Origin: Takakia lepidozioides | Lineage: Eukaryota > Plantae > Bryophyta | Direction: 5' to 3' | DNA: 64,000 nucleotides | NCBI GenBank assembly: GCA_030704615.1 | Contig: CM060734.1 | Location: forward strand, 1,302,001-1,366,000 | Shown: in pieces, positions 21,778 to 59,636 of the stretch | How the letters are laid out: every line of letters begins with the position of its first letter | How positions within the stretch are numbered: position 1 is the first letter of the stretch | The notes under the pieces: model-generated | Seen by the model: the letters and a program-made list of their open reading frames with translations, nothing else | Databases searched by the model: none | What the model was told of the DNA's origin: nothing | Translations under genes and position numbers: made by a program

Positions 21778-21832
21778 CTTGGTATCAAAGCTTAGAGTTC
21801 AGTACACGATCATCCTTGGAATCGGCCTCATC

Positions 21833-24800
21833 ATGGGGTCGGGCAAGCGAAAGCGAAAGCGGAACGGCCCGAAAGATGATGATCCTGGTGAGCCCGATGG
21901 GGGCGACGTGTCACCGAAGCGGCCATTTGAGGAAGCGATGCATGCCTTTGGAAGCGAGGCCGCTCAAGGACGGGAGGAATCTGAGGAGTCGGAGCCCGAT
22001 GAATCCCTGAGAGCTCCGACAGACCAACAGATGCCTCCCATGCCAACAGCCTTTTGGGAAGGGTTGTTGGCGCAGTTTGGTGGGACGTTGAAAGACGTGT
22101 TGAAGGCGGCTAATGCCACTTCCACTAAGGCAAAGTTTAAGGTGAAGCCTAAGGAACCCGACACCTTCGAGGGCGTCCAAAATCGGAAGGCACTCAACAC
22201 CTGGCTCTTGGAGCTAGAGCAGTACTTCCGGGCGGCCAAGTTGGATGACGAGGATCGGGTGGAAGTGGCTCCCACCTATTTGAGGGGCTATGCTCAACAA
22301 TGGTGGCAGAAACGCCTTCACGACCGAGGTCCAAACCCGGAGACCTTGAACTGGAGTGGGTTCAAGAAACTCATGAAGAGACAGTTTGTGCCCCTCAACG
22401 CGTCCTGGCTCGCCCGAGACAAGATGAGGAATTTGAAGCAAACGGATGATATTCGGGGATATGTTCAGGCTTTCAATGTGCTGTTGCTCGAAGTCGCGGA
22501 CATGGCAGAACCAGAAATGGTCTTCAACTTTGTGGTGGGACTAGCCCCATGGGCCAGACGGAAGTTGGAGGAGAAGCCACCTAAGACTTTGAACGAGGCA
22601 ATTGAAAGGGCTGAATGTTTCTCGGATGTTCCTAGGGGCGAAAGACAAGGCCGTACGGAGCTGAACCACAAGAAGGTCCGGCGGGAAGGTGACTCCTTCC
22701 GACCGGAAAAGAAGTGGGATAGGCCACGCGGCGACAATGGCGCATGGAAATCGAAGGGAGGGCCCTCACACGTCAAGACAACATCCGGTGCCCCGAAAAG
22801 AAAATCAGGTGCGGCGGCTTATGGCGGACAGAAGGCGACCTTCGATGGAGAGTGCTTTAATTGCGGGGAGCTCGGGCACATGGCCAAGAAGTGTACGAAT
22901 CCCCGACAATTGAACATGACTCGGGCAACCACGGAGTTATCCGAAGCCTCCATCAGCCGCTTGGTGGAGATGGTGGTCGCCAAGACTTGCAAGGTAGGCA
23001 ACTATTCTTGTGAGTTGTATCAGGAAACTGACGCCTTGCGTAAAGGGAGTCAGTTAATGTTTGTGACTGGGATAATTTCCGGAACTAACGTATCGTTGTT
23101 AGTGGACACAGGAGCGTCGCACTCCTTCATGACATCGACAACGGCATGGAAGCTGGGACTCCCGACAAGTGATGTGGGGGCCTCGATTGAGGTGCGTTCT
23201 GCTAAAGGAGAACCACAATTGGCGACGAGGTTGGCGTTCGATGTTCCTCTTCAGTTCGGGAGTTGGGAGGGACGTGAGAACTTCACCATTTGCGAGATCG
23301 ATGGAGTGGATCTCATTTTGGGGATGACCTTTTTGAGCAGATCCGGAGCGGTCATAGATGGCCGCAAAAGAGTAGTCACGTTACCGTGTGGGAATGGTGG
23401 CGAAGTTTTACGAGTGTCGGAAACGCCCAACCCCGTGGGAGGGCGAATAAACCTTCTGTCAGCAAGGGAGTGGGCCGTGGTGGAGCCACACGAGCCCCAG
23501 TTTTTGCTTTACGTAAGACAAGTGAAGGAAAAAGGCGATGGGGAGCCGAGCCCAGATTGGATCAAGGGGATTTTGGAGAAATATCAGGATGTGATGCCGG
23601 AGGATTTACCAAGCGGCTTGCCACCGCGAAGAGGAGTTGACCACAAAATTGAGGTGATACCGCGATCGGAGCCGCCTGCCAAGGCACCCTACCGGTTGAG
23701 CCACAGAGAGTTGGTCGAGTTGAAGACTCAGCTCAAGGATCTAATGTCAAAGGGGTACATCCGGCCGAGTAAGTCACCTTACGGAGCCCCGATGCTATTC
23801 GCAGACAAGAAGGATGGGACGCTGCGGATGTGTGTTGATTACAGGGCTCTGAATAAGGTGACTATAAAAAACCGATACCCTTTGCCAAGGATCGATGATC
23901 TCTTCGATCGGTTGGCAGGAGCGAAGTATTTCAGCCGGATCGATTTGCGCTCCGGATATCATCAAATTCGAGTGGCGGAAGGAGATGAGGAAAAGACCGC
24001 GTGCAGGACAAGGTATGGTTCCTATGAGTTCTTGGTGATGCCCTTTGGGCTCACCAACGCACCCGCAACCTTTAGCACGCTAATGAACAGCCTTTTCCAA
24101 GAGTGGTTGGATGACTTTGTGATCGTGTACATCGACGACATCTTGGTGTACTCGAAAACAAAGGAAGAGCACTTGGAGCACCTAAAAAGGGTGTTCCAGA
24201 AATTACGGGAAGGGAAGCTATATGCCAAAGCTTCAAAGTGCGAATTTGGGGTCACAAAAGTGGAGTTCTTGGGGCATATGATTACACAGGATGAGATCAA
24301 AATGGATGACAGAAATATGAGAGCAATCTTGGACTGGGAGCCTCCGACTTCAATCCCAGGAGTGCGATCCTTCTTAGGACTCGCCTCCTATTACCGAAAG
24401 TATGTGAGAAATTTCGCCAAGATTGCGGGGCCACTGTCAGACCTCCTGTGTAAATCCAAAGTCTGGGTATGGAACACCTTTTGTGGCCAAGCTTTTGCCG
24501 AGTTGAAGCAGCGGATGGCGGAAGCTCCAGTCCTGAAAATCCCGGAGTTCGACCGCCCATTTGAGATTCATACGGATGCGTCGGACTTCGCGATTGGAGG
24601 TGTACTCATGCAGGAGGGACATCCAGTGGCTTACGAAAGTAAGAAACTGAATGAAGTGGAGCGGCGGTGGCCAACGCATGAGAAAGAAATGAAGGCGGTG
24701 GTGCATTGCCTTGAGCTTTGGCGCCACTATATTGGCTCCAACCCGGTGAAGATGTTCACGGACAATGTCACGGTGAAGTATTTTGCCACGTAGCCTAAGT

Positions 24801-25625
24801 TGTCCCCAAAACAAATTAGGTGGCAAGACACTTTGGCACTCTTCGCCGTGGATATCCAGTACAAACCGGGACGGGACAATGTGCTAGCTGATGCTTTAAG
24901 TAGAAAGCAACAGCTCATGATGATGTACAGGGGCGAGACGGCGCTCCAAAGGAAGATTCGGAAGGCTTACCGGAAGGATGAGATGACGAAGTCCGTGACG
25001 CGGGACTTGAGGATGGGGGTTAAATCGCAGTTCCACTTGCAAAATGGAGTGCTCTGGTATAAGCAAAAACGTCTCTATGTGCCGATGGGAGGGATCAGAG
25101 ATAGTCTCTTGAGAGAATGCCATGATGGCCCGCTTGTGGGCCACGGCAGAGCCAAGCGCACCGCGGCACTCCTGAAGAAAGAGTATTTATGGCCCAAACT
25201 GTGGGAGGAGGCCGAGGAGTATGTCAAGACATGCACCACATGCCAACAAAACCGGAGCAAGTACAAAAAGCAAGCGGGGCTGTTACAACCCTTGCCGATT
25301 CCAGAGGGGTCTTGGGAAAGTGTCTCGATGGACTTCATGACTGCTATGCCGCTGTCAAAAAGATTCGACGCAATCATGGTGGTGGTGGATAGGTTCAGTA
25401 AAATGGGTCATTTCATCCCCACCAAGGAGACGACAACGGCGCAGGAGACGGGGCGACTTTACTTCGCCCACGTCTTCAAGCATCATGGACTCCCGAAGGA
25501 TATTGTCTCGGACCGTGATCCAAAGTTTACTAGTAAATTTTGGAGGGTACTTTGGAAGAAAATGGGGACGAGGCTCAAAATGAGCACTGCCTTTCGACCT
25601 ACGACGGACGGCCAAACGGAAAGGC
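21833..25625 (+). pseudogene. gag-pol polyprotein with a nonsense codon and a truncated integrase
   Basis: [14 protein letters not shown] knuckle, [10 protein letters not shown] protease, [17 protein letters not shown] RNase H, H..H..CTTC and DDE integrase. TAG at 24791-24793. Integrase homology ends after TDGQTER. Confidence 0.93.
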
Positions 25626-26096
25626 GTCGTAGTGCGGCTTCGGCGTGTACCCGTACCTCAGGCCAGCATTCCAAAGCGGACCCAATTGTAGTGATTGAGG
25701 CGCACGGTTGGTTCGAGGTTATCTTCCTAGTCAAAAAAGGGTTCAAGGCGAACCCTTGCTCAAGGTGATGCCAAAAGCGACATCACGAGCGGTCGCTAGC
25801 AAATGTTGTTGCAGTAAGGCGATTCGATCCTCGGGGAGGATCGATCCTTGGCCCTGAAGTGGGTCAAGAAGAGTGCACTGGGAGGAGCTTGAGAAGCTCC
25901 ACCCTTGGCCGGGACTTGGAGGAAGTCGGCCGAACTAGCTAGTGGAGAGAAGAATCAAGTGGTGGTTTGGTCCTTAGCCATGGGACGCCATGGTGTGGAA
26001 ACAAACTCGTTGATGTGGGACGCCACAACTTGGATGTTCGTTTCTACAAAATAGACAAGTCAATGAGGACATCGACTCCCTGTTGGTAGGGGTGTG

Positions 26097-41482: not shown

Positions 41483-42674
41483 TGCTCCTCCGTTCTCCCA
41501 ACACGAAGCGACTTCACGGTTTAAGTCTAAAAGGCTCTAATTCATCAACACTTGCACAAAAATCGTGCAAATTCCATTCTACTGCTCCCTGTCTCCGCGA
41601 CGTCTCCTCATCGCACTTTGACACAACATGCTTCCTTTGTCACCTAGTGATACATCACACCACGGCCCCTGCCAGAAGAGGAAATCCACCAGGATACTCA
41701 ATCAAAGTGACCGACAATCTGTAGTCAGTAATAATTGTGTTCTTCCCACAGTGACCGAACAGTAGTCGAATGTTGCCCTTGAAAATAGAGCTCTGTGACA
41801 AGACCGCTTTGATCTCGTATCCAGTCTCAAGCGGACATAGGAGGTGCGAATGGACCACGCACTTACCAACAATGCAAGATGCAGCTAAAGGAACATGCGA
41901 GATTCCAAGGAACTGTACTGCCGTTGAACTGGAATCCAAAGTCTTTGTGCAAGCTCAAACCCTTTATGCAATGAGAGCCACGGTAAAAAGGAGAGAAGAC
42001 ATGGACGAGTGAAAGCTGTTAAGCTTTCAAACATCAATCACAGACTTCGAGAAGATAGAACTGCTTGTACGGGAAATTCGACCAGAAAAGAAAGAAAATG
42101 AGCTAGAAACGGGAGCACAGATTCACAGGTGCGAACCAACCAACTACCACATACTCATGGACGTCAAAAGCATGTTTGCAAGCTTCCAGATGCCGCTTAT
42201 TAGACGAGATGTAGAGCGGACGCACAGCCCCACACGCAGCGAAGCCAGACAGCAAAAGCCAAGAGCGCACATCTCTGTTCGGTGGGCCTTATCTCTGGGG
42301 GTATTATTTATGTAATAATAAGGGAATCACAAATACGGCTCTGAAACAAGAATAAATATAGTTTAAGTTACTTTACCCCTCCTTTTCATCCACGTAAAGC
42401 CCTATGAGATTTTTTCCTATAGCTTTTATGGGGCGGGTTATAGAGCAGAATGGGGGGGTATTAGGGCGTCACATGTGAGCTCCGTCGTGGGCGTGTGAGC
42501 TCCCCCGTGAGCGTGAGCGGGAGCTTACGCGTAAGATCCCTGCAACGCAGGGAAAAACGTGTAAGGCTCATCCACCCCCTCATCCAGCCTTGGATCTACG
42601 GCCTACGCAGGGTTCCGTCGGGCTTTACGCAGGGTGAGGATAATGCCTCACCCTATACGTATTTGTTTTGAAAC

Positions 42675-43163
42675 TATGGAATACTATTTGGGTGGGGACG
42701 GAGACGGCTCACGGAGTCCGTCACCATTGATGGTGACGGACGCCGTTCACCGTCACCGTCCATGGTGACGGACGCCTTGAGCCGTCTCCGTCGGTTTGGC
42801 GAAACTATCCGGAAAAGATATATATTCCACTTTTCAGCTGCCCGGCGACACCAAATTTTCTCAAACTTTTTTTATTAAATCAAATACTGTGTACTATTTG
42901 AGAGGGGACGGAGACGGCTCACGGCGACGGGCAAGATCACCGTCACCGTGGGTTTGGCTAAACTGTCCAGTAATGCCAGGAAAAGAAATATTGTCACTTT
43001 TGTCGTCGCCAAGTGATACAATAACTTCGAAGCTCAAGTATAACCTGCCCGGACTGCCCCAAAAAGAACCGAAAATTACTTCTTGAGCTCTCTGAAGCTC
43101 AAGTGTCTGACGCTCAAGCTCAAGTGCGGTGTTTCATGGACAGAATGCCAAATGTGGGAGCTT
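42675..43163 (+). repeat. Left TIR
   Basis: Reverse complement of ~58654-59135. Internal repeat TACTATTTG.G.GGGGACGGAGACGGCTCACGG occurs twice, plus CCGTCACCAT/ATGGTGACGG hairpins. Confidence 0.93.
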
Positions 43164-43715
43164 GGTATGGTAGGGAGGCTCTGGAGATCTATGAGCAAAT
43201 GATACTGGAAGGGGTAACCAACATGGTCACATTCATCTGTGTCCTGAATGCTTGTGCCAACCTTGTCGACATGTATGCCAAATGCGGGAGCATGGAGGAT
43301 GCACGTCAAGTGTTTGACAGAATGATTCAATAAAATGTGGTGGCATGGAATACCATGATTGCAGGATATGCTCAGCGTGGTTGTGGCAGGGAGGCTCTTC
43401 AGATCTATGAGCAAATGATATGTGAAAGGGTGATGCCAGACAAGGTCACGTTCAATTGTGTTCTCAATGCGTGTGGAAGCCTGGTGCCCTGGAAACAGGT
43501 AAAGAGGTCCATTCTGCCATCATCGAAACTAGAATGTGGTAGCATGAAGAATGCGTCTCAAGTGTTTTGTAATATGGCTGAACGGGATGTGAACTCATGG
43601 AGTGCAATGATCGTAGGTTTGCCCAGCATGACTATGCTAGGGAGGCTGTGCGACTATTTGAGGAGATGCAACAGGAAGGCGAAGCCGAATAGTATCACCT
43701 TTGTATCTATTCTGG
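43140..43715 (+). pseudogene. PLS-class PPR fragments at the inner edge of the left TIR
   Basis: LVDMYAKCGSMEDARQVFDRM and VVAWNTMIAGYAQRGCGREALQIYEQM..PDKVTFNCVLNACGSL. Confidence 0.9.
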
Positions 43716-43719
43716 GTGA

Positions 43720-46078
43720 AGATAACTTCTCACTTGAGCAGAAAAAGCTGACTGTGCTGGCACGCTGGCACTCAGCCTGGTGGCCGACAGCAATGGGTAA
43801 CGTTGCCAGCGTGCAGGCTGACAATAAAGAAGCTACAGCCCCCACAAGTGCATGGTGGCAGCAGGTGCCGAAGGTGCTGGACTATTGCGATGCTCTGCTT
43901 CTTCGCCGTCCTTCTTTGCTCGGGTAACTTTTCCTTTCTCCAGCATAACTGCAGAAAGATTGCATGAATGTTGTGTTTCCAATTTTCCTGAAATGGTCAT
44001 TGGCTTTGCCATTTTACTGATTTAACAAGGTGCTGGGAATGCAGACCATGAATGGTGCTGCATCAATAGTGGGCAAGTATTGTGCAGGGCAAGGGAGGAG
44101 GCAATAATCGAGAGAGAAATGGTTGGGGCATAGGTAAACATGAGCATTGCCATCTTGCCCATGTCAGTCGAGTTTCACTGGAGTCCCACAACAGTGGGCT
44201 TGGTGCAGTCCTCCTTTATCTGGGGTTATCTACTCATCCATGTTGGCTTTGTACCTCTCTCAAACTTATGTAAGGGAAGGCTTATGTAAGGGAAGGGAGG
44301 TCAATGCTCTTCTTGCAGAGGGAGCAATATTGAACAGCACTTAGGATTATCCAGAACTAACTGATCTGAAGTTTAGGAGTTTTTAGCTCGCAATTGTGAA
44401 TATTTGGTGGTAGGGTTTTTGCATTAAGGACTTCCTGAGGAGTCCCTGTTGTTGTATTGATGTGCCAAGTATTTCTGGAGGGTAGCAGATAGTCAAGTTT
44501 CCTTGCTCTTTGTGTTACCACTTCAGATATAAGCTGACCAAAGGATGAAGATGTCCTCATCTTAGAGTGCAACGGTTTGTCCAAACATGAATTTCTTAAT
44601 TTAGACCCTACTGGTAAACCACCCAAACCTGAGCAAGGGCATCTTTAAGTTGTTAGTGAAGTTAAGGGAGAACACTAAGCCACAGACCAAAAGAAAGTTA
44701 TAAACAGAGGGTCATATGCTAGAATGTAAGCTGCTAAGAAGAAAGGGTCGCAAATTGCAGGGGGAATATGGGCGGATAGCATTGGCGGAAAGCAGGTGCT
44801 TGGAGTTGGCGTGATATGGTGGTCCATTGCCACCATGGCTACGCCAATTGCTGCCAAACTTGGGCTGCCTACTCTTCTCCTTCTGCGTGCCTGCATGGGT
44901 GTGGGCGAGGTGAGTTATTATATGATCATGAGTGTTTTTCTTCCCTAAGTACAGTCCCTAAGGTTGGGTTAATGTGGTTCCATTTTCCTACGTTAACCAT
45001 AAGATGTGCATGAACATTGTTGTTTTCTAAACTCAAGTGTGATTGTAGCCAATGGGAGCCAACTGCAGCTCTTCCTTATACGGCTGTGCAATATGGCCTT
45101 TCTCGAGATGTTCACCTTAGTTTGTACGAAGCCTTTGACCTTTTGTTCTTAATATATTCACGATGAGTTCACGCTATGATCTTCATTTCAATTTAAACTA
45201 GTGTGTTTCTCAGAGGATGGGCGTAACATGGGTGCCCGGGAGGGTTGGGGGGGAAATGCAAGGGTGTTGCAATGCCAGCAATGAATAACCTGCTAACACG
45301 CCGGGTGCCAGTTGGGGAGCGGAGCAGATCACTAGCCTTCGTCTATAGTGGGATGTACCTCGGGTCAGTGATAGGACCCGGGTCTCATTCACAAATTCAC
45401 TGGCCATCTGTCTTCTTCTCGTTTGGTTCAGTCGGTGCTCTTTGATTTGCTGCCTGGCAACGATATGTAAGCTTGCATGCCTTATCCATTCTTCCTTGGT
45501 TAGCCCGCTTCTCCTTTCCAGTTGCCCTCTCTAGGTGATTTTTCTTCCATCAAAGCTTTGAATTCTCAATACTGCTCTCACTCTTTCTTCAATTAGTTTT
45601 TGATGTGCTTAATTGGGCACATGAACTAGATATGCTGCACTGCGGACAGGATCTGGGAAAAAGATGGCTGTGGGGATTCTATGGTCTACAACTTGTATCT
45701 CAGTGTTGTGATGATGCATCTGCAAGTCAGTGATCTAACAGCAGAGTTGTTGTTCTCTCTTCTGTGAGTTTAGGATTGCAACAGACAGACCTCTACACAG
45801 GGGAGATGAGGTTTTGGTATGAACGAAAATGAGAGAAGTTTGGAGGCTGAAGGGATATTGATCTGGGGTTGACGGGTAGGCATATAGCTCGCCTGCAGAA
45901 GACCCTGAGATCACAGAAGAGAAAAAGAAACTGATCTTGGGAGATAGTGAGCCCAAGGCACATCCCTTAGGGATTGCTCTTGTCAAAAGCATCTGTCTGG
46001 GCTTTAATCGTCTGCCACTTCTGCCACAATTGGGGAACGTGATTCCGTCTTACTTGGATGCCCACATATTATAATCAG
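43720..46078 (+). pseudogene. PHT4: Captured partial PHT4/ANTR-family plastid anion transporter gene with introns
   Basis: Exons WWQQVPK..CWTIAMLCFFAVLLC, VNMSIAILPMSVEFHWSPTTVGLVQSSFIWGYLL (44132-44240), QIAGGIWAD..RACMGVGE (44750-44909), GVAMPAMNNLL..ERSRSLAFVYSGMYLGSV and WALIVCHFCHNWG..LTWMPTYYNQ. Stops and frameshifts present; no C-terminal half. Confidence 0.88.
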
Positions 46079-48279
46079 GTAATCCTTGCTGCACCTCTGG
46101 TCTCGATGTCTTGTGTCTCTATCTCCATATCTGTCCCTCCTTTCCCTCTCTCCTCATCACCCTCCCCCTCACCATCTTCCGCTCAAACTAGGCACAGGGT
46201 ATTATCAAACTGATATGTCCCTGTTTCCCTCTGTGACTGAAAGAAGGAACCCCAGAATTGAAGTGAAATGGCAGCAGATAGCAGGGAGAATGACATAAGG
46301 ATTACGGCAGAGTACATCATGGCCACCAACATATTTATCACTGTGAGGGGAGTAAGGTGGTAGTCTACAGATACAACAATCTCTACCATTAAAGACTGCA
46401 TCAATTTTTGAACCAATGGACATCTCTGGTAAGAAGAGTACGCAAAATAAAGATTGGCAGACTTTGTACAAGGACATGGTTACTCATGCTTTGTGAGAAA
46501 CTTCTGAGTCAACAACACCCAACAAGTCGACTTTCTGAGTATCCACCTAAAGGGAATGGCACTGATGCATTTGAGCCACATTGAGGGGGAGGGAGAGAAA
46601 ACGAGAGAGCAAGAGGCGGGTGCAAGAAATGCACTGCAGAACCAAACCTACAGGTTCTGCCGCGGTAAGTTCAGAGTTCACCTTATTTGTTTGTGACATA
46701 TTGTTTTTAGCCAATAACAGCCACCCTTAACTGGCTGGACGGATGAAAGCCGGTCGCTGTTTCTTCTTCTTTCCTGCCCTCTTGTTCGCAAAAGCCTGGC
46801 CTTCGTCGTCTTGCCCCTGGGATCTGGGCGTGGAAGAATTGGTGCGATTCACACCATGCAATACACCCCTCCCTGTCAGCACACGTATAATTAAACTCAT
46901 ATGTGCAATGACTTGCCATTGGATAGAACTGCCATGCATATCTCAAAGCCAGTGACATATCATTACAATTGACAAGATTATTGCTAGCACTTTTTTTTTA
47001 TGGTTTTCCAGGTTCACAATGGCTTGTCCCATATACCCAAAGGAATTGCCACACCTTTAACATGTTCTTTTAAGTAGTAAACAACCTTTTGCGCCATGGC
47101 ATGGGTTTTGATTCCCTTTGGCAAATGATGTCATTTGGATGTAATCAAGTAAGCTAATTTGATATGTGGATTATGATAGCGCCGTTGTACAAGCTGGTCT
47201 TGGCTAGGACAATTTGGTTGGAAAAACACTTTCACAATATCTTTTGACTAAGCGGAAGCCCAATGCTGAAGTCCCCGCTCTCACAACCACTTGTAGATGT
47301 TAATGCGGAGAGACGGATAAATATGCTTTAAATAAGATAGGGCCCATCCTTGAAAAGGGGCAGCAGCCGCAAGGGGTTAGTTACGTCGGCCTCGGCCGGA
47401 GTCTTCTCTCTCTCTCTCCTTTAAATAATGAAAAAATAAATGCTGAATGCCAGAACAAATCTGCGTTAAATACAATACAACAAAGCATTTTTCATGAATC
47501 CGTGACATTAAATCAAAACCCAAATGATCTAAAATTTAAACCAATTGCAAATAAAACAAATATGATATCCAAATCTGCCTGTTGTATCAAAACGAGCCCC
47601 ACCATCATTACATTGGGCGAATCAATATGAAATGAAATACATGTTCATCTCTTCATAAAACTTGAATATACCCCATCTATATGGACTTTGTTCTCATAAG
47701 CTGTCACTAGTACTGGTGCGGAGCAACGCAAAGCCCTAGTGATATGATACAAAGATAATGAAACACTACAACAGATGAGCGTTTTTATGACTACGGTTTC
47801 GGCGGAGTCATAAAAACGACACTAGATATACGACTACAGAGCACTGAAATGTATTGTAGTCATAGTTTTATCACTCTGTAGTAATGGATATCAGTACATG
47901 ACTCCGGAAAGATAGGGAGCATTGGTCAAACATTGTTGATCACGATGACAGGGATGGTTTACATGACTAGTGTGATATGTTTCGCTACACGTGGACGACG
48001 TCTCATGGAAACGTATGACTTCATGATTAAGGATGGATTCATAGCTCTGTTTATACGACTACAATGTCACTACATGTGTCATTTTGAAGGCACATACACA
48101 AATGTATTCATCCATTGGATGAGTTCATTCATCAATGATCAAAATGCAAAAGGTTAAAAAAATTCAAAAATGTTGTTTATAGGGTTGCCCATTAGGTAGC
48201 CGTGAACTGAGGGCTGGGACTTTTTGGGCTCCTTTTGGGCTTTTTGGTCTCCAGCCACACCATCTGTTTTCTTAGTATC

Positions 48280-51200
48280 CACGAGCCTAGAGATGTTGTG
48301 TGGAACGCGATGATTGCAGGCTATGCAGGGGCGTGGGATAGAGGCTTTGCAAACCTATTCTTTAGCAAATGATGCAGGAAGGGCGAGGATATGCACAGCG
48401 TCGACGTGGTATAGAGGCTTCGGAGACGTATGAGCAAATAATGCGAGAAGGGGCGAAGCCGGACCGGGTCACGTTCGTTTGTGTTTGCAATGCGTGTGCA
48501 AGTTTGGCAGCTCTAGAAAAAGGTAAAAGGTCCATGGTGACATTGTCAAATTTGGAATTGTATCCCATGTCATTCTGAACGATACCCTCGTGGACATGTA
48601 TGCCAAATGTGGCAGTATTGAGGATGCAAAGGGAGTGTTCGAGACTATGGCTGAACGAAATGTCGTGTCATGGAGTGTGATGGTCACGGGATATGCCCCA
48701 TCATGGATGCAGGATGGAGGCATTGGAGACCTATGAGCAAATGATGCTGGAAGGGGTAAAGCCAGACCCGGTCACGTTCGTTTGTATATGCAATGCGTGT
48801 GCGAGTCTGGCAGCCGTGGAAAATGGCAAAGAGGTTCATGGTGACATCATCAGAGCTGGAATGTACCCGAAGTCATTCTGAACAATACCCTCGGTGGACA
48901 TGTATGCGAAATGTGGGTGCATCATGGATGCGAAGAGAGTTTTCAACAGTATGGCTGAACGAGATGTGGTGTCGTGGAACACGATGCTTGCGGGGTATGC
49001 ACAGCAAGGCCGTGGGAAGGAGGCTTTGGAGACCTATGATCAAATGATGGTGAAGGGGTGAAGCCCGACCACATCACGTTTGATTGCATTTGCAAGCCTG
49101 GCAGCCCTGGAAAAGGACAAAGAGGTCCAATGTGACATTGTCAGAGCTGGAATTGTACCCGATGTCATTTTGAACAGTACTCTCGTGGACATGTATGCAA
49201 AAGGAGTGTTCAACAGTATGGCTGAACGAGATGTGGTGTCGTGGAGTGCGATGATTGCAGGATATGCACAACAAAGGCGCGGGATGGAGGCTTTGGAGAC
49301 CTATGAGCACCTTCTTCAACACATTTCAGCCTGTTTTCCCTGAACTATCAGAGTCGTCCCTAAATTTTCAGTTGAATTCTACAAGTTAGCTCGTTGGTGC
49401 AAAAAGGTGAATGTCTGTTGGAAGCGCAAGTCAGCATATGAACTAGTGTGATAAGTAGGGTTAGGGTGTTTGCTGGAACATATCTAGGCTGTCATTGTCA
49501 GCTGCTAGCAGCAAGGCAAAGATGTGTGCATGATTTGTGCAGAGGCAGAGATAGCTGAAGGAGCAGGGATAGAGAGTGGGTCCTGATTCATCCAAGAGGG
49601 CCAAATTTCAAGCACAAGATTACTTATGATTCCCTGTGGATCAATAGCTATAAAAAACTTGCATGGGTAGATCGTCAACTGGATGCCACAGCAACAGTGG
49701 CACAACTGATAAATTTAGGCACTGGTAATCAAGGCACCTTCTTCAACACATTTCACCCTGTTTTTCCCTCTTATCAGAATCGGCCCTAAATTTCCATGTT
49801 GAATTCTTCAAGTTAGCTGGTTAGTTGGGTGGAAGTATGTGGGAGATGTTAACCCTGATTATGGTTGACGGTTTTAGTGTATTATGATATGATGTTATCC
49901 ATCTCAGAAGTGTATGTTTCTCTTGCACACTTTGTCAGAATCATCTGGTCTGCGCTCTTGGCTCCTGTTAGTACCATGATTTGGTATTCTTCCTGATGTT
50001 TACAAGATTCTTGGGAGTGTCAGCTTGGTCTTAGCAAGCCGTGTTTCAATCTCTGCCCGCTCAGCTGCACCATGGTGGTTCTCACAGACCAATTCGACAT
50101 TACCTGACTACAGACACAAGCAGCACACACAAGAGGTCCTCTTGGGTTCATGGTCAGTCAAATCCTCCATGGGTCATGACACAAGGTCGAGGACAATGTG
50201 GTGAGGGCATCTTCTTCTTCAACCTATTTCAGCCTGTTTTGACCTCTCATCAGACTCGGCCCTGATATGCATATTGAATTCTGTAAGTTAGCTCGTTGGG
50301 TGGATCTGTGGTTGTTTGGGATGACTTTGTCAAGTTTCTGCCGATGTGGCAACATGAAAGTATCCAAAAACAGATAACAGAAATGAGGAGAAGCGTTGGA
50401 ATGAACACTTTTCCAACCCCAGTCAATGGTGGGAAAATGAGACAAAAAGGTGAATGCCCGTTGGACTACAGAGAGAAGCAGATGCAATTCAGAATTGGAA
50501 CTTATATTGTAATAAGTACTTAGGGCTGGGGTGTTACTGGAAGAACTTCACGCCGTCAGTGTCAGCTGCTAATAGCAAGGCTGAGGATGCATTCATGATT
50601 TGTACACAGGCAGGGATAGTTGAAGGACCAGGGATAGAGGTCCAGATTCATCCCAGAGGGCCGGATTTCAAACTCAAGATTACTTCTGATTCCCTGTGGA
50701 TCAATAGGTATAAGAAATCTGCGTGGGTAGATGGTCATGAACTGGAAACAGCAGCAGCAACAGCACAATTGATAGAACAAGGCACTGCTAATGAAGGTAC
50801 CTTCTTCAACACATTTCACCCTGTTTTTCCCTGTTATCAGAGTCGTCCCTAAATTTTCATGTAGAGTTCTGCAAGCTAGCTAATGTTGGCAGGATTTACC
50901 AAGCATGAGTGTGGTAGGAATGTTTTGGAGACCTACGAGCAAATGTTGCGCGAAGGGGTGAAGCCCAACCACATCACGTTTGTTTGTGTTTGCAATGCGT
51001 GTGCAAACCTGGGACCTCTGGAAAAGGGGAAAGAGGTCCATGGTGACATCGTCAAAGCTGGAATTGTATTAGATGTCATTTTGAACACTGCCCTGGTGGC
51101 CATGCAGTATGCCAAATGTGGGTGCATTAAGGATGCGAAGGGAGTTTTCAACACTATGGCTGAACGAGATGTGGTGTCATGGAACGCGATGCTTGCAGGG

Positions 51201-52730
51201 TATGCACAGCAGTGATATGATATGGAGGCTTTGGAGACCTATGCTAAAATGATGGGGGAAGGGGGCACCTTCTTCAATAGCACAACGGCTACAAGTGGGT
51301 AGATGGTCAACTGGAAATAGCAGCGGCAGCAGCACAATTGATAGAACAAGGCACTGCTAATGAAGGTACCTTCTTCAACACATTTCACCCTGTTTTTCCC
51401 TGTTATCAGAGTCGTCCCTAAATTTTCATGTAGAATTATGCAAGCTAGCTAATGTTGGCAGGATTTACCAAACATGGGTGTGGTAGGAATGCTTTGGAGA
51501 CCTATGAGCAAATGTTGCGCGAAGGGGTGAAGCCCAACCACATCACGTTTGTTTGTGTTTGCAATGTGTGTGCAAACCTGGGACCTCTGGAAAAGGGGAA
51601 AGAGGTCCATGGTGACATCGTCAAAGCTGGAATTGTATCAGACGTCATTCTGAACACTGCCCTGGTGGACCAGTATGCCAAATGTGGGTGCATTAAGGAT
51701 GCGAAGGGAGTTTCCAACACTATGGCTGAACGAGATGTGGTGTCATGGAACGCGATGCTTGCAGGGTATGCACAGCAGGGACATGGTAAGGAGGCTTTGG
51801 AGACTTATGAGAAAATGATGGGGGAAGGGGGCACCTTCTTCAATAACACAGCGGCTAAGTGGGTAGATGGTCAACTGGAAACAGCAGCGGCAACAACACA
51901 ATTGATAGAACAAGGCATTGCTAATGAAGGTACCTTCTTCAACATATTTCACCCTATTTTTCCCTGTTATCAGAGTCGTCCCTAAATTTTCATGTTGAAT
52001 TCTGCAAGTTAGCTTGTTGGTGGATCTATGGTGATTTTGGAATGATATTGACATGTTACTGCCAATGTGGTCGACAAGAAAATATCAAAAAACAGATAAT
52101 AGAGATGAGGAGAAGCTCTGGAATGAATACGTTTCCAACCCAGTCAATGGTGGAACAATCCAGGCAGAAAGGTGAATGCCTGTTGGAGGCAGAGGCAAGT
52201 CTGCATAGAAACTAGCGTGATAAGTAGGGTTGGGGTGTTTGCTCGAACAATTCTAGGCTGACATTGTTAGCTCCTAGCAGCAAAGCAATGCATGATTTGT
52301 GCAGAGGCATGGATAGCTGAAGGAGCGGGGATAGACTGTGGGTCCAGATTCATCCAAGAGGGCCGGATTTCAAGCTCCAGATTACCTATGATTCCCTGTG
52401 GAAGGATAGGTACAAGAAACCTGCATGGGTAGATGGTCAACTGGAAGCCGCAGCAGCAGCGACACAATTGATCAAATCAGGCACTGTTAATCAAGACACC
52501 TTCTTCAACACATATCACCCTGTTTTTCCCTCTTATAAGAATTGGCCCTAAATTTTCATGTTGAATTCTGCAAGTTAGCTGGTTGAGTGAACTTTTGATA
52601 GTTTGGAGTGACTTTGACATGATACTGCCAATTTGACAACAGGAAAGTATCCAGAAAATAGGTAACAGAGACGAGGAGAAGCTGTGCAATGAATACTTTT
52701 TTGACCCCAATCAATGGTGGGACAATCGAG
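48280..52730 (+). pseudogene. Shuffled PLS-PPR and PDF-motif fragments
   Basis: PPR tracts at 48280-49305, 50883-51260 and 51452-51830. PDF exon A/B pairs around a ~176-196-bp GT-AG intron (e.g. 52172-52347, 50450-50645). Confidence 0.9.
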
Positions 52731-52732
52731 GT

Positions 52733-52866
52733 TTTGGGCTGATGAGCACGACCCCTGCAGGGATGTCTCTCATCTCATGAAGAATCTTCGGGTGTGTGGT
52801 GACTGCCACACTGCCACCAAGTTCGTTTCGAAGTTGTTGGCCGAATGCAGTTGTAAGGAGTATTGC
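52733..52866 (+). pseudogene. C-terminal remnant of a DYW cytidine-deaminase domain
   Basis: FGLMSTTPAG.. then LMKNLRVCGDCHTATKFVSK..ECSCKEY. The HxE motif and the RDxxRFHHF segment are absent. Confidence 0.85.
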
Positions 52867-53699
52867 ACTCGTTAGTTGTAAATAGAGTCCTTCATTCTAG
52901 GAGAGTATCAGAACTGGAATAGTACTAAAAAACTTATGCCCTTGTGTGGGCTTGCTAAATTTTTGCTCTGCCTTAGACTTTGAGGCATCCGTGGGGATGC
53001 TTGTCCAATTTCGAATTTTGTAATATAATTTACAGGGCTTGTACTCTCCTGTACATGTCAACTTATCCTCCTAGTATGTAGGACAACAGTGGCTTCCATT
53101 CTATTTTCCCAAAAACATAATGAAGAATTTAAATCAATTAATAATCTAAATTTTATAATTTTATTTATTAAATTAAAAACATTATTCAAAAAACCTCTTT
53201 ATGACATGTGTTAGTCATACCTGTGGACATGTAGTCATATAATGTAGTCATGAAGTTATATACTCATGACTACATCACTACATGTGGCATTATATGATAC
53301 GATATTCTTTCCCACATGTAGGTCATATATGTTGTCCACGTGGACACGTGTCACATCCACCGCTATGACTTGCACAACGCAGTCATAAAGGATGGTTGCT
53401 ATGACAAGGTTTTTTTTCACTACAAAGTGATGTAGTCATGAACGCATATAAGACTGAAAATATAGTCATATGTGCAGTCATAAAAACGCTCATCTGTTGT
53501 AGTGAAAACGATACGCTTATCTTACGCTCAAACGATACGTTCAAATGTATACACAAGTGAAACCATACAATCCTTTACATGTACTATAGACAATGGATTT
53601 TGTCTTGTCTTAAGGATGAGCAAACATGTTAAATATATTTGTTTCAGTCATGTTGAGTACCTCTGCTATTTGGAGATTTGGATTAGCCTCCATGTCATT

Positions 53700-54372
53700 C
53701 CCAGACTCATCCATGTCCATTGTTAGGGGAGGGAATCCTGCAAAGTCATCTTCACTGGCATTCGGGGGGCCAACCAATCTACAAAATGCATGTTATGAAG
53801 ATTAGAACTTGTGTATTAAACAATTGAACTATCATAAACAAATGGTGTACTAACTTACCCACATTCTCGCTCATTTGATTGGAACTTGGCCGCAGGCACA
53901 TGGCTCTCAATGTATCTGCCATTTTGTGTGATTTTGCGAACTCGATGGAAATTCCATGCCTCAACAAGCCTGTCAAGGTCCTCTTGCTTAGTTGGCAAGA
54001 AGACAATGTACACTGACATTTTGTGCCAAGGATCTCGGATGTCAAGAATATCCCTATTCGCCATGAGAGTCAGAAGATGCTTGAAGAAGAACATGCAATG
54101 AGTCCATATATAACGCCACCAATGCTCAATTCTCTGCACATAATATTTACAACCTTATGCATTACATTAGTTTATCCATGCTTTTGTGTAGCTACAACAA
54201 CAACAAATCAATGAAAAAAAATTAAATAAAAGAAGTGCTTCATATCTGATTATGGACAGATGCACCTGTGAGAAATGTATTAGGCACTGAAGGTCGAGCT
54301 GCCTCCATATCTTCCCGCACCAACACATGTTCACCTGCAAAATCTGATCGGATTCGGAGGGGATGTCCAAAT
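53700..54372 (-). pseudogene. IS3EU-like DDE transposase fragment with introns
   Basis: FGHP/RIRSDFAGEHVLV..FLTGASVHNQ, intron 54245-54134 (donor mutated to AT), then RIEHWWRYIWTHCMFFFKHLL..LD..VFLPTKQEDLDRLVEAWNFHRVR. The N-terminal part is missing. Confidence 0.8.
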
Positions 54373-55628
54373 CATCGAATTGTAATGACTGTGGGGCTTG
54401 TTTTGATACAACGGCAAGCAGACTTGGATTATGATTGTTGTTTATATGATATCTTTTTTATTTAATTGAATGAGCTAGAGCAGCTAGAGGCGAGCAAATG
54501 AGATAAAAACAAAGGCATCAGGACAAAATGACAAGGAAAAGAAACAACAAATCTTGGTCAATAATACACTACATCCCCCAGAAATTTTCTGTATTTCAGA
54601 ATGGGCACCTTGCTGGGCTTGCTGCACTTTACTGGCAAGAGGGGCCCAGTAACCATCAGAGAGTTCTCAATGAGTTTACTAGGCTCTCACAGGGGTATAT
54701 ATTGTATGTATTGACTAGGACTGTGTCAAGGAGTCAGGCACTCTGGTTGCACAATATAAGCTTTGGGTTTTATGATCAATGACAAAGCACTTTGTACACT
54801 AAAAATATTTTTGTATGTGACATTCTGGTTATATCTTGGGTGCACAAAACAAAAGCTGTTTTTGTCTGATCTGACATCTTGGGTGTCTGTCCTTAATGAG
54901 AACTTGCTAGGGCTTGGAGGGGATCTCAACTTGAAAAGCATAAATCAATCAAAGCTCAGTAAAGCAACCATCATGGGAAGTAAGAGTTACACATATCAAT
55001 TCCAATCTTTAACATGACGAGTGGAAATGGGTTTGGACAGTTATAGCTCTAACTTGCGAGTCCCAAGTTCCACAAGTGACACTGTAGAAATGGTCTGAAA
55101 GGTCACTTTACAAAACTTTTACATTGACATGTGGCATGTGTACTGCACATTCACTACCAATGCCCATGAGTTTAAACCACCATTTAGCTGCTGCTAAAAA
55201 GACCCAAATGGATGAGTCGCAATCCACTGGCGGAAGTGTCACTTGGAAAAGGCTTAGCTTACAAGTGTTTCTAAGACAATGGGGTAAACTACACCTATGC
55301 AAAGTTCGAACCAGTAAAATGCAATGACAATTATTAGGCACTACCAACCCTTCCTGTCTGGGATCTGTCTCCCCTGCACTACTTTGTCAGTGTCATCCTC
55401 AGGTGTAACTATTCACAGCATACAGGTCAGGAAGCAACCACAATGATGTAAGGCTGTCCAAAGCACACAGAATTAGAGGGTAAACACAGGTAGGGGTGAT
55501 GCACACGCCTCAACATCAAATCCCAATCAACCATCCACCCGAAGAGTGGGTCCTCAATCACAGTTTGCACTTAGCCAGACTACTGCTATTCCCCAGTAGC
55601 CAGAATCTACCACCACAAAACTTGTTGC

Positions 55629-56158
55629 CTAATAGTAGGGCCTGTGGCGCATAGGTCGCCTGAACATAGCCGCCTTCCTGACATGGTTTCACCCAATAGG
55701 TATCAGTTTTATGAGATTAATCCGTCAGTCTTCCGAACCTTCATGGCAACTACAGCATTTAACTCAGAGCTCTTTAGTCTAACCCATAAAAGGTAGTTGA
55801 GGTCCTTACAGATGTTCTACAGCACAGTGAGAAGTGCCAAAAAACACAGTTGCAGGCACCCGAAAAACTTTTAGCATGAAAAACTAGACATTTGTAGCCA
55901 ACATAATCATCCTTGCAAGCTGTAGACACTACTATGAAGTTAGCTTGCACCACAAACAACAAAGATTGAACTCTGCTATGAAATATGCACACCACATGAG
56001 TTAGAAAGGAAATTCCTTGTGGATACCCACCCATAACCATAGGGAGTATACCCATAGGGAGCCAGGTAGGGCCTCCTGGGGCGGTACCCATAATAAGGGT
56101 TGAATCGGCGGCCTCGAAATGCCTTCATTCCTGGCACATTAGTCCTCTTTAAGGTCAC
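55629..56158 (-). pseudogene. PABN: Captured last two exons of a nuclear poly(A)-binding protein (PABN/PABPN1-like)
   Basis: VTLKRTNVPGMKAFRGRRFNPYYGYRPRRPYLAPYGYTPYGYG, intron, then KAAMFRRPMRHRPYY*. No RRM exons seen upstream. Confidence 0.85.
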
Positions 56159-57254
56159 ATGCAACCATGTCTCCACAGAGAGACTTGTCAGCTAACCAAC
56201 CCGACTGCTACCCTTCAGAGTTGCTGTCCACTACCCAAAAGGGGTTGCTTAAGGTATCTAATGAAGGTTATAAGTACGGAATGGTCATGCTTGGAGGGAG
56301 GGAGAACGGAATGGATGACAGCAGGAGGGATACCAACAAAAAGTGCAGTGGTGGGAAATGAGCTTACCCCTGTTCTTTGCTGGTTTAATCCAGCACTTGT
56401 GACTATGAATAAATAACCATTGGGCTCCAAGGTTGTCCCAACTGTGCCAGAAAGCAAGGAAACATATAATCCATATTGACATGACAAAATATATGAATGA
56501 ATCCTTGTTCCTGCAGCTCTAGCAATCTGCCGATACTAATACTGCAATTCACCAGTCACTGGTAATTCAATAGCCTTGCCTGTGCACAGGCCAATTACAG
56601 ATTTTGAGAGAGAGCCACCTACTTGGGAAGCGTGGGCTGGGTTCACTACATCCCTAATAATATTCTCCATATTCAGAGTCCCAAACATGTGCCAACAATC
56701 TCTCCCCTTGCCCCTAGAAGCCCCACACCATCCACACAAACCCATCAGCCATCTTTCTTTAAGCTTAGCTTCAACCATCTTTTGTGGCATCAAGACTTCA
56801 GTACAAACACATGAGCAAAGACACCACGACACATGGCATAACATTGCACAATCCCATGAGGTAATAGCATCTGGAAAGCGATTTTACAGATAGAGAAAGT
56901 GGGTTTATGACAAGAGGACTTACTGGTACATCTTGCAAATCTTGCAGACCATTGACTGTTTTGTTTACAGTATTTCTCTTCTCCTACAGGCCCCAATGCA
57001 AATAGTCACACCATGCAGTAGGAGAACCAGTAAACCGAAGAAGAGCTCCAATATGTCAGGCAAAGTCAATTGCATCCACCAGGGGGAAGGGGTAGGTTAA
57101 ATATCAGGCTCCTGCAGGAAATTACTGGAAAATTCCTTACATGGAAGAACCTTTCAGTAGAAATTACAAATGGAGAGAAGTGGGTCGAAGTCATCACTGT
57201 GCTGCACTCCCATCCATGATAGAGGTCTGCTATTATGCTAGGGTACTAAGTACA

Positions 57255-58675
57255 GGGGGCCCAGGCTTCCACATGCATTGAGAACACAATTGAACGTGAC
57301 CTTGTCTGGCATCACCCTTTCCCCCATCATTTGCTCATAGATCTGAAGAGCCTCCCTGCCACAACCACGCTGAGCATATCCTGCAATCACGGTGTTCCAT
57401 GCCACCACAAATTTAAACCATGAAGGAGGGCTTGCACCAGGAGTGTGACTTACCTTTACAAAGAAAGGAAGTAAAGAGAATCTTTGTGACGTCTTCGGCC
57501 TGGATGACAATTCTACTGCCGGAATCTATCCTCCACTTTACTTCTGTGGCTATGTGAAGAAATTTTAGGGGTAGAAAAAAAGAGAAATGAAAAATGACAC
57601 TAACATCCGTGGATAGCTCAAAGAGCTTATGGACAAGAGAAAACATGAAACAAGAAAGAGAGAGGGGCCCTCCACAAGCAGCCCAATCGTTCAAGGGATT
57701 CTAAGAGTCAACACCTCATGCAGATATGCTGCTAAGAAAGAAAGAGAGTGTAGGGGCCTGCAAAGAGAGAAGGGATTGTGTGCATCATATGTTTCAATGA
57801 CTTCGCATTCTCAAGTTGCTTTCCAAACTACGAATGCCTACCTGGAGCTCCGTGACAATAAGACCTAGATGTTGAACATTTCGGTTGGAGTCTGAGAACT
57901 CATGGAGCAAGTGCAAGTTCTCCTGCACGAATTGCTGAGATTCCTGTTGGTGTTCTCCCTCTTTTCGAATAACTGCATCCTCCAACACCTTCACAAATTT
58001 TTTCCTGTCGCGATATGCAACGGATCAGGCCTAAAAGACATCCATACTTCATGTTGCGTGCGTACCACAGGGAAAGAGAATGTCAGTTCCATTCCAAGTA
58101 TCCCATACAGTTGTCAGCAAAGGTGGTCCAACTTGATAAATTGACTCAGCCCTGTCTGATTTTGCACCAGTGTGGACAAGGATGCACATGAAAAGGCACA
58201 GTGTGGGGTACTACCCCTTCCAGTATCATTTGCTCATAGATCTGCAGAGCCTCCCTACCATACCCATTCTGAGCATATCCCGTGATCATGGCGTTCTAAG
58301 AGACCACATCTTGTTGAGTCATATTGTCAAACACTTTGCGCGCTTCCTTAACGCTTCTACATTTAGCATTGACAACAAGGGCTGTCTCGAGAATGATATG
58401 TGACCCAATTCCAGCTTTGATGCTGTCAGCATGTACCTCTGTGCCCTTTCAAGAGCTTGGAGGCTCCCACACGCACGAAGAACGCAGACAAATGTCACCT
58501 TGTTTGGGGTGAAGAACCCTTGGTGTTTCACTTGCTCATAGAGGCCAAAAGCTTCCCTAGGACTCTCATACTTTTGCATATCCTGAGATCATTGCACTCC
58601 ATGAGACCACATTGCGATCAGGCGTTTTGTCAAACATTTGACGTGCATCCTTCAAGCTCCCACATTTGGCATTCT
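57255..58675 (-). pseudogene. PLS-class PPR fragments (57255-57410, 58210-58675) mirroring the left-arm copies, flanking an unidentified coiled-coil exon
   Basis: VVAWNTVIAGYAQRGCGREALQIYEQMMGERVMPDKVTFNCVLNACGSL is nearly identical to 43337-43490. Exon 57842-58015 reads KVLEDAVIRKEGEHQQESQQFVQENLHLL..ELQ followed by GT. Confidence 0.85.
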
Positions 58676-59135
58676 GTAAACACCGCACTTGAGCTTGAGC
58701 GTCAGACATTGCGCTTCAGAGAGCTCAAGAAGTAATTTTCGGTTCTTTTTGGGGCAGTCCGGGCAGGTTATACTTGAGCTTCGAAGTTATTGTGTCACTT
58801 GGCAGGGACAAAAGTGACAATATTTCTTTTCCTGGCATTACTGGACAGTTTAGCCAAACCCACGGTGACGGTGATCTTGCCCGTCGCCGTGAGCCGTCTC
58901 CGTCCCCTCTCAAATAGTACACCGTATTTGATTTAATAAAAAAAGTTTGAGAAAATTTGATGTCGCCGGGCAGCTGAAAAGTGGAATATATATCTTTTCC
59001 GGATAGTTTCGCCAAACCGACGGAGACGGTCAAAGCGTCCGTCACCATGGACGGTGACGGTGAACGGCGTCCGTCACCATTGATTGTGGCGGGCTCCGTG
59101 AGCCGTCTCCGTCCCCGCCCAAATAGTATTCCATA
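58654..59135 (-). repeat. Right TIR
   Basis: Inverted copy of 42675-43163; the spurious ORFs 42796-43086(+) and 58725-59048(-) translate almost identically. Confidence 0.93.
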
Positions 59136-59303
59136 TGAAACACCAATTTTGAAACACCACCGATGCTCTCAGTTTAATTGTTGAATTAAAAGAATAAATA
59201 AAATACAGACAAAAACAATTATCTACCGAGTGGGGAACTCAAAGGTCCAATTTCATTACTACCTAACACTGCAGCAGTAAAATCAGTTAACAAAGTACTA
59301 GAG

Positions 59304-59636
59304 AACGGGCCATGTTTGGCCGATTCTGCCCTGTAAGCGGCCTTTGGGCGAGCCCTATGGCCGCGCACAGGGCAGAGTCGGCCAACGCGGCCTGTTCACT
59401 GGCGTTAAAAGCAGGTGTGGCGGATTCTCGCCGCTATGTGGCGCAATATGATTGAGGTTCGATTATCCCATATCGATTGCCCAGATTCAGAGCCCCGAGA
59501 GGAATTGACATGGGCCTCAGTGGTAGGTCTGCCGTCCTCTCTGCGTCCATCCCTGCCGATTCTGCCCTGGGTGGCCGATTCGGCCTGAGAATTAGGCCGA
59601 AAAAGTGGCAGAATCCGCCACACCTGCTTTTAACGA
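59304..59636. repeat. Two adjacent foldback/MITE-like inverted repeats
   Basis: CGTTAAAAGCAGGTGTGGCGGATTCT (59403-59428) pairs with ~59610-59635. GGCCGATTCTGCCCTGT pairs with ACAGGGCAGAGTCGGCC within 59304-59396. Confidence 0.7.

What the first reader, a model, noticed from the sequence alone, without database searches (positions are those of the whole stretch)
42675..59135. Gene-capturing IS3EU-like transposon in a land plant
Seen: TATGG..CCATA ends, a 6-bp TSD, ~490-bp TIRs and a transposase core (P.RIRSD.GE..G.SVHNQRIE.WW..WN.H.VR). The empty site restores a TTTTGAAACACCA tandem. Cargo comes from at least four genes (PPR, PHT4, PABN, a coiled-coil exon), with introns retained. Established: the Repbase IS3EU superfamily has TAY..RTA termini and 6-bp TSDs and is known mainly from animals and fungi. 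Pack-type capture in plants is documented mostly for MULE, CACTA and Helitron elements. Inference: a 'Pack-IS3EU' element, which I have not seen described.
Basis: partly seen in the sequence, partly recalled or inferred. Interest (0 to 1): 0.85.

Follow-up and report, generated by a model that had tools for sequence, protein, structure and literature searches.

The report
Dead GingerRoot transposon carrying gene fragments
This is a real but dead 16.5-kb jumping gene of the GingerRoot/IS3EU kind that carries pieces of host genes, a behaviour already published for this superfamily in a clubmoss in 2019, and most of its PPR "cargo" belongs to a second transposon (CACTA type) that later landed inside it.

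Summary
The TIRs are 490 bp and 95.7% identical (42675-43164 / 58653-59135). The ends are TATGG..CCATA and the 6-bp TSD is TGAAAC. An internal integrase-core remnant matches Pfam rva_4, positions 62-171 of 194.

The novelty claim does not hold. These are the defining features of GingerRoot (Cerbin 2019, PMC6839031), which forms one lineage with Repbase IS3EU (Kojima 2023, PMC10045372). GingerRoot is reported from lycophytes and bryophytes. In Selaginella, 29% of intact copies carry gene fragments with introns and usually lack the DDE region.

Three corrections:
- **Nested CACTA.** 47764-53504 is a 5.7-kb CACTA element with perfect 29-bp TIRs and an AAA TSD. It holds the PPR/DYW tandem block, so that block is not GingerRoot cargo.
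- **Dead transposase.** Only two exons are recognisable. The region with the first catalytic D is absent, there is an upstream stop, and the splice donor is AT instead of GT.
- **Longer arms.** The inverted homology continues patchily into PPR sequence in both arms.

Genuine cargo remains: PPR pieces, three SLC17/PHT4 exons with two GT-AG introns, a PABN last exon, and a coiled-coil-like piece.

Other GingerRoot copies were already noted in this genome by the scan. Verdict: new member of a known kind.

The parts
42669..42674 (.). Left copy of the 6-bp target site duplication, TGAAAC
   Evidence: identical hexamer at 59136-59141
42675..43164 (+). Left terminal inverted repeat, starting TATGG. 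The terminal ~33-nt motif (42682-42714) recurs at 42892-42924. There is a 32-bp palindromic tandem at 42718-42792. The inner ~55 bp is already PPR-like coding sequence.
43100..43924 (+). PPR (PLS-type) gene fragment next to the left TIR. Blocks 43164-43216 and 43336-43489 recur inverted in the right arm at 98% and 95%.
   Evidence: (PPR_2 E 9.7e-18)
44748..46078 (+). SLC17/PHT4-type transporter fragment with three exons (about 44748-44909, 45263-45466, 45880-46078) and two retained GT..AG introns. It is disabled by an in-frame TGA at 45443-45445 and by a second break (in-frame stop or frameshift) in exon 3.
   Evidence: MFS_1 positions 49-108 and 94-163; sialin/VGLUT
47533..47612 (+). Inverted 84-bp copy (75%) of the stretch just upstream of the transposase remnant (54381-54463). 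Meaning unresolved.
47764..53504 (+). Nested non-autonomous CACTA element with perfect 29-bp TIRs (CACTACAACAGATGAGCG...) and an AAA TSD at 47761-47763 / 53505-53507. It carries tandem PPR plus non-PPR units and a DYW piece. Its interior is 84-91% identical to window 8.6-14.5 kb.
   Evidence: its right terminus has read depth about 250x single copy
53859..54371 (-). GingerRoot/IS3EU transposase remnant: exon A 54371-54246 (..RIRSD..SVHNQ) and exon B 54133-53859 (RIEHWW..), separated by a 112-bp intron. The second D and the E are present. The first catalytic D region is absent. A stop lies directly upstream, and the intron donor is AT instead of GT.
55990..56170 (-). Last-exon fragment of a nuclear poly(A)-binding protein (PABN / PAB2)
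   Evidence: 79% identity to 'polyadenylate-binding protein 2'; a second genomic copy at about 95% (contig over 55906-56150)
57797..58024 (-). Open piece with coiled-coil-like features; source gene not identified. A 1207-nt contig from another locus shares 57896-58202 at 98.4% and then runs on unlike for 900 nt beyond 58202, which marks a capture boundary.
   Evidence: (no Pfam hit)
57241..58652 (-). Right-arm PPR fragments (57241-57525 and 58212-58652), mirror images of the left-arm PPR piece and interrupted by the coiled-coil-like insert
58653..59135 (-). Right terminal inverted repeat, ending CCATA
59136..59141 (.). Right copy of the target site duplication, TGAAAC

Best explanation
The 16,461-bp unit is one old, non-autonomous insertion of a GingerRoot (IS3EU/GingerRoot superfamily) cut-and-paste DNA transposon.

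Shown:
- It inserted as a single unit into a TTTTGAAACACCA tandem and duplicated 6 bp.
- It keeps long TIRs with TA..TA ends.
- It keeps two exons of its integrase-type (rva_4) transposase gene. The intron sits at the same place as in related elements.
- Its interior outside those exons holds disabled fragments of unrelated host genes on both strands: PPR, an SLC17/PHT4 transporter with introns, a PABN last exon, and one unidentified piece.
- A 5.7-kb CACTA element with its own PPR/DYW cargo later inserted about 350 bp downstream of the transposase remnant.

Inferred:
- It moved in trans, using transposase from autonomous GingerRoot copies that recognised the terminal ~33-nt motif. That motif occurs twice in each arm.
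- Gene pieces were taken up at the DNA level, probably by template switching during gap repair after excision, with loss of the 5' half of the transposase gene. A HECT partner gene may also have been lost, if this family ever had one.
- The PPR piece present in both arms reflects copying of one arm onto the other.
- It is now immobile.
For: - **Boundaries:** TIRs, TSD and restored empty site.
- **Remnant family:** it matches rva_4 only, at E 5e-13. The Gypsy integrase in the same window is rve plus H2C2 instead.
- **Relatives:** 131 relatives have E of 0.001 or better. They include moss Ceratodon 'integrase core domain' proteins at 40% identity. Full-length relatives are rva_4, one with an IS3-type HTH_21.
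- **Intron position:** the HNQ|RIE junction is conserved in metagenome relatives L005 and L006.
- **Match to GingerRoot itself:** by my own count, 31 of 71 positions match the Sl-GR-005 DDE string printed in PMC6839031.
- **No nested GingerRoot:** no internal TIR pair or TSD surrounds the remnant.
- **Loss of the N-terminal half:**
- **Cargo:**
- **Other genomic copies of cargo:** 92-98% identical, with a break at 58202.
- **Literature definition and gene capture:**
Against: - No second copy of this TIR family could be read. The reads show only this element's two arms plus at most one copy at about 80%. TSD length and mobility therefore rest on one insertion.
- No autonomous element with these TIRs was examined, so the link between the remnant and the TIRs is by position only.
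- The TIRs are 3-5 times longer than the 100-150 bp reported for Selaginella.
- Parent genes were not retrieved.
- No formal tree with Repbase IS3EU or GingerRoot references was built.
Confidence: 0.8

Rival explanations
1. The integrase remnant is not this element's own gene. It would be a nested or captured piece of another GingerRoot, and the 490-bp TIRs would belong to a different superfamily that also makes 6-bp TSDs.
For: The remnant is truncated and sits about 4.8 kb from the nearest TIR. The region upstream of it (54246-55439) is present about 10 times in the genome, while the TIRs are nearly unique. An 84-bp inverted match flanks the remnant.
Against: TA..TA ends plus a 6-bp TSD are the GingerRoot/IS3EU signature. 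No TIR or TSD pair surrounds the remnant. Finding the matching transposase type inside an element with exactly that signature would be a coincidence.
Confidence: 0.08
2. These are two independent solo GingerRoot ends in inverted orientation that happen to flank ordinary host DNA. The genes inside would then be resident pseudogenes rather than cargo.
For: The arms are only 95.7% identical. Selaginella has many unpaired GingerRoot TIRs.
Against: The outer flanks share an exact 6-bp duplication, and removing the unit restores a perfect tandem motif. The interior is a patchwork of partial genes on both strands rather than a normal gene stretch. Another locus shares 57896-58202 at 98.4% and then diverges.
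Confidence: 0.05
3. It is a local inverted segmental duplication or a foldback rearrangement, not a transposon insertion.
For: Inverted homology extends patchily beyond the TIRs into PPR sequence, roughly symmetric about the centre.
Against: The termini are precise, with a TSD and TA..TA ends. Transposase remnants lie inside. Nearly all of the interior is not mirrored.
Confidence: 0.03

Closest known systems
GingerRoot elements carrying gene fragments (Selaginella lepidophylla; Cerbin et al. 2019, PMC6839031)
   Same: 6-bp TSD, TA..TA termini and TIRs. Integrase-related DDE transposase without an HHCC finger. Internal fragments of several host genes with introns retained. Loss of the DDE region in cargo-bearing copies. 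Low activity.
   Different: TIRs are about 490 bp here versus 100-150 bp. The element is 16.5 kb (10.7 kb without the nested CACTA) versus 3.9-12.9 kb. The host is a different plant, called a moss in earlier notes of this scan; I did not verify this independently. The same PPR fragment is present in both arms. This TIR family is nearly single-copy.
Repbase IS3EU superfamily (as summarised by Kojima 2023, PMC10045372)
   Same: TA..TA termini and usually a 6-bp TSD. IS3/IS481-like DDE core. Same lineage as GingerRoot (bootstrap 99%).
   Different: Repbase entries come mainly from animals and fungi. No Repbase sequence was available here for a direct comparison.
Pack-MULE / Pack-CACTA elements
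   Same: Non-autonomous TIR elements whose interior is a mosaic of host-gene fragments acquired as DNA. The nested element at 47764-53504 is itself a Pack-CACTA.
   Different: The outer element has a different transposase superfamily, TSD length (6 versus 9-10 or 3 bp) and termini.

Membership tests
GingerRoot / IS3EU superfamily | 6-bp target site duplication | tested here: met
   TGAAAC at 42669-42674 and 59136-59141. The restored empty site is a perfect tandem.
GingerRoot / IS3EU superfamily | 5'-TA...TA-3' termini | tested here: met
   TATGG...CCATA. Definition from PMC6839031 and PMC10045372.
GingerRoot / IS3EU superfamily | Terminal inverted repeats (100-150 bp in the type species) | tested here: met
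   TIRs are present but longer: 490 bp at 95.7%.
GingerRoot / IS3EU superfamily | Integrase-related DDE transposase of the IS3EU/GingerRoot type, without an HHCC zinc finger | tested here: met
   Met only as a remnant. rva_4 positions 62-171 with the second D and the E. Relatives are rva_4, one with IS3-type HTH_21 and none with H2C2. The first D region is missing, so the copy is not autonomous.
GingerRoot / IS3EU superfamily | Transposase groups with reference GingerRoot/IS3EU proteins in a tree | not tested
   No reference sequences are held under an id. I only made a by-eye count of 31/71 identities against the Sl-GR-005 string quoted.
GingerRoot / IS3EU superfamily | Sibling copies of the same family with 6-bp TSDs | not testable with these tools
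   Only this window of the genome can be read. Contigs show at most one further TIR-like copy at about 80%.
Pack-type (gene-fragment-carrying) transposon | Fragments of non-transposon host genes between the TIRs and outside any nested element | tested here: met
   SLC17/PHT4, PABN and arm-adjacent PPR. All lie outside the nested CACTA at 47764-53504.
Pack-type (gene-fragment-carrying) transposon | Acquired as DNA (introns retained) | tested here: met
   The PHT4 fragment has donors GT at 44910 and 45467 and acceptors AG at 45261-62 and 45878-79. The exon junction reads GVGE|GVAMPAMNN.
Pack-type (gene-fragment-carrying) transposon | Identifiable parental genes elsewhere in the genome | tested here: inconclusive
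   Contigs 92-98% identical cover 55507-57231 and 57896-58202, and one runs on unlike beyond 58202. They could not be read or shown to be intact genes.
CACTA (nested element 47764-53504) | CACTA...TAGTG termini with a 3-bp TSD | tested here: met
   Perfect 29-bp TIRs, with 0 matches expected by chance. AAA flanks both sides, but AAA is low-complexity and so weak on its own.

The most novel reading that the evidence does not exclude
This may be the first documented gene capture by GingerRoot outside Selaginella. The same captured PPR piece sits in both arms, so the inverted repeat once ran for roughly 0.8-1.9 kb. A later 0.8-kb foreign insert sits inside one arm only. This layout could record the capture mechanism, namely arm-to-arm copying or template switching at the subterminal regions. 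If sibling copies show the same pattern, that mechanism becomes testable.
Probability: 0.2. Interest if true: 0.4.

Novelty: new member of a known kind. Interest (0 to 1): 0.25.

Why it matters
It adds one well-bounded example of a GingerRoot/IS3EU element carrying gene fragments in a second land-plant lineage. It also shows two transposon superfamilies, GingerRoot and a nested CACTA, both moving PPR-gene fragments in a PPR-rich genome. For annotation, the PPR, PHT4 and PABN pieces here are transposon-borne pseudogene fragments, not genes. It does not establish a new class of element.

Tried and rejected
- **Close relatives of the transposase exon.** The word-indexed protein search found none. 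The exhaustive HMMER search gave 54% identity at best.
- **Ceratodon and ENA loci (L003, L004).** They share no DNA with the TIRs and show no spanning TIR pair.
- **Missing transposase half or HECT partner.** I searched with tblastn using 131 relatives, regular expressions for the first-D motif, tblastx against L003-L006, and Pfam on 28 open pieces. All found nothing beyond exons A and B.
- **Host lineage.** The window's Gypsy polyprotein gave only generic streptophyte hits.
- **PABN piece.** The PDB and the first Atlas search gave nothing. The last homology search confirmed it.
- **Arms as independent short elements.** Rejected: neither arm has its own inner terminus or TSD.
- **Findings look-up.** By TIR sequence and by terminal words it was blank.
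- I did not align against the Sl-GR-005 string from the paper, because it has no reference id.
Full report
**Observation**

- A self-BLAST of 42675-43170 finds one inverted partner, 59135-58653, over 490 bp at 95.7% identity, and no other copy in the window.
- The unit begins TATGG and ends CCATA. The hexamer TGAAAC lies directly outside both ends, at 42669-42674 and 59136-59141.
- Deleting the unit and one hexamer gives TTTTGAAACACCA-A-TTTTGAAACACCA. The bases beyond the TSD therefore also fit a single clean insertion.
- A contig assembled from reads of the same sample crosses the right junction without change (59051-59324).
- Each arm contains the terminal ~33-nt motif twice (42682-42714 and 42892-42924) and a 32-bp palindromic tandem. 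These are plausible transposase binding sites; this is inference.

**Transposase**

- Two stop-free pieces on the minus strand match Pfam PF24764 (rva_4, integrase core). Piece 54371-54243 covers profile positions 62-103, and piece 54154-53858 covers positions 102-171 of 194.
- Read on the minus strand, exon A ends ..SVHNQ at 54246. Exon B starts RIEHWW at 54133 after an AG acceptor, and ends before a GTAAGT donor near 53858.
- The same HNQ|RIE intron position occurs in metagenome relatives L005 and L006. Exon A is 68% identical to them and exon B 41%.
- The remnant is dead. The intron donor reads AT instead of GT, and a stop lies directly upstream of FGHPL.
- The part with the first catalytic D is absent. 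Three searches all found nothing: tblastn with 131 relatives, motif searches in all six frames of the element, and tblastx with four related loci.
- I searched the exons one by one by reference and did not build a joined protein.

**What the transposase belongs to**

- The exhaustive HMMER search gave 131 relatives, the best at 54% identity.
- Named relatives are 'integrase core domain' proteins of the moss Ceratodon purpureus (40% identity over 96 residues), the green alga Coccomyxa and the mussel Dreissena.
- Full-length relatives carry rva_4. One also has an IS3-type HTH_21, and none has an H2C2 finger. The Gypsy integrase in this same window is H2C2 plus rve instead.
- Kojima 2023 (PMC10045372) states that IS3EU families end TA..TA, usually make 6-bp TSDs, lack the HHCC motif, and form one lineage with GingerRoot (bootstrap 99%).
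- Cerbin 2019 (PMC6839031) defines GingerRoot in Selaginella lepidophylla by a 6-bp TSD, TA..TA ends, 100-150-bp TIRs and an integrase-related DDE. The authors detected it in lycophytes and bryophytes.
- The DDE string printed in that paper aligns by eye with the window's two exons at 31 of 71 positions. This is my own count. I did not run it through a tool, because the string has no reference id.

**Gene capture is already published for this superfamily**

Cerbin 2019 reports the following.
- 22 of 77 intact GingerRoots carry fragments of ten genes, with introns and exons.
- Some elements carry pieces of two genes.
- Only 6 of those 22 keep a DDE motif.

**Nested CACTA**

- Sensitive inverted self-comparison gave an exact 29-bp match, 47764-47792 against 53504-53476.
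- The sequence is CACTACAACAGATGAGCG..., a CACTA terminus. It occurs only at these two places in the window, with 0 matches expected by chance.
- AAA flanks both sides.
- The right terminus has read depth about 250 times single copy, so this is a high-copy family.
- Its interior, 48290-52731, holds the 303-bp-period PPR tandem, repeated PPR-plus-non-PPR units and a DYW piece. It is 84-91% identical to window 8.6-14.5 kb.
- This block is cargo of the CACTA, not of the GingerRoot. Without it the GingerRoot is about 10.7 kb.

**Cargo of the GingerRoot proper**

1. **PPR fragments** lie next to both TIRs in mirror orientation.
   - Blocks 43164-43216 and 43336-43489 recur in the right arm at 98% and 95%.
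   - In the right arm they are separated by 388 bp and 802 bp that the left arm lacks.
   - The inverted repeat therefore once extended well beyond 490 bp and included PPR sequence.
2. **An SLC17/PHT4-type transporter fragment** has three exons.
   - MFS_1 positions 49-108 and 94-163 are covered, and the best solved relatives are sialin and VGLUT.
   - Two GT..AG introns are retained. There is an in-frame TGA and a second break (an in-frame stop or frameshift) in exon 3.
3. **The last exon of a nuclear poly(A)-binding protein** is 79% identical to a protein that JGI names polyadenylate-binding protein 2.
4. **An unidentified open piece** has coiled-coil-like features only.

**Evidence from reads**

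laid contigs of one sample, probably the assembly's own, on 53450-59400. Single-copy depth is about 30.
- TIR bins have depth 55-85. That is this element's two arms plus at most one copy at about 80%.
- Exon B has one further copy at about 90%.
- 55507-57231 has a second copy at 92-95%.
- A 1207-nt contig shares 57896-58202 at 98.4% and then continues for 900 nt unlike the window beyond 58202. That is where the arm PPR resumes, and it is the signature of a capture breakpoint.
- PPR-like stretches reach depths of 14,000-78,000, so the genome holds thousands of similar PPR units.

**Mechanism**

- Shown: one insertion with a 6-bp staggered-cut footprint; non-autonomous; a mosaic of DNA-level gene fragments; a later CACTA insertion.
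- Inferred: mobilisation in trans by autonomous GingerRoot copies. First-stage notes report such copies elsewhere in this genome; I could not read them.
- Inferred: capture by template switching during gap repair, and arm-to-arm copying of the PPR piece.
- Related elements carry a HECT ligase gene upstream of the transposase (L005). This agrees with earlier follow-up notes. No HECT trace is left here.

**Host**

Earlier follow-ups call this genome a moss. My only independent hints are the moss relatives of the transposase and the plant-type Gypsy element. I treat 'moss' as unverified.

**Verdict**

It is a new member of a known kind, with modest peculiarities: long TIRs, PPR sequence in both arms, and a Pack-CACTA nested inside a gene-carrying GingerRoot.

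Noticed in passing
window 47764-53504 and 8600-14500: The nested CACTA's cargo is a tandem of PPR motifs joined to a non-PPR unit (..IHPRGPDFKLKIT..WVDG..). It is 84-91% identical to a block at 8.6-14.5 kb of the same window. The same chimeric PPR unit therefore sits at two places 35 kb apart, at least one of them inside a CACTA element.
   Followed up: partly
window 57231-57429 and 58226-58822: PPR-like stretches attract contigs summing to depth 14,000-78,000, against about 30 for single-copy sequence. The genome holds thousands of PPR units at least 80% identical at the DNA level.
   Followed up: no
window 47533-47612 and 54381-54463: An 84-bp inverted match (75%) brackets the transposase remnant once the CACTA is removed. 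The surrounding 54246-55439 is present about 10 times in the genome. It may be GingerRoot backbone or another repeat.
   Followed up: partly
L005 2226-2456 (and the 31.5-kb JGI contig of P0004): In metagenome relatives of the transposase, a HECT-domain gene (Pfam E 1e-8) lies about 4 kb upstream on the same strand. This matches earlier notes of a HECT partner in GingerRoot elements.
   Followed up: partly
window 21770-25768: A Gypsy-type LTR retrotransposon with a 1007-aa gag-protease-RT-RNase H reading frame followed by an H2C2+rve integrase frame. A second, broken gag copy lies at 30.2-31.4 kb.
   Followed up: partly
window 59221-59400: The right flank of the element is itself a repeat with depth about 4,000 (about 140 copies). 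The GingerRoot sits in repeat-rich DNA.
   Followed up: no
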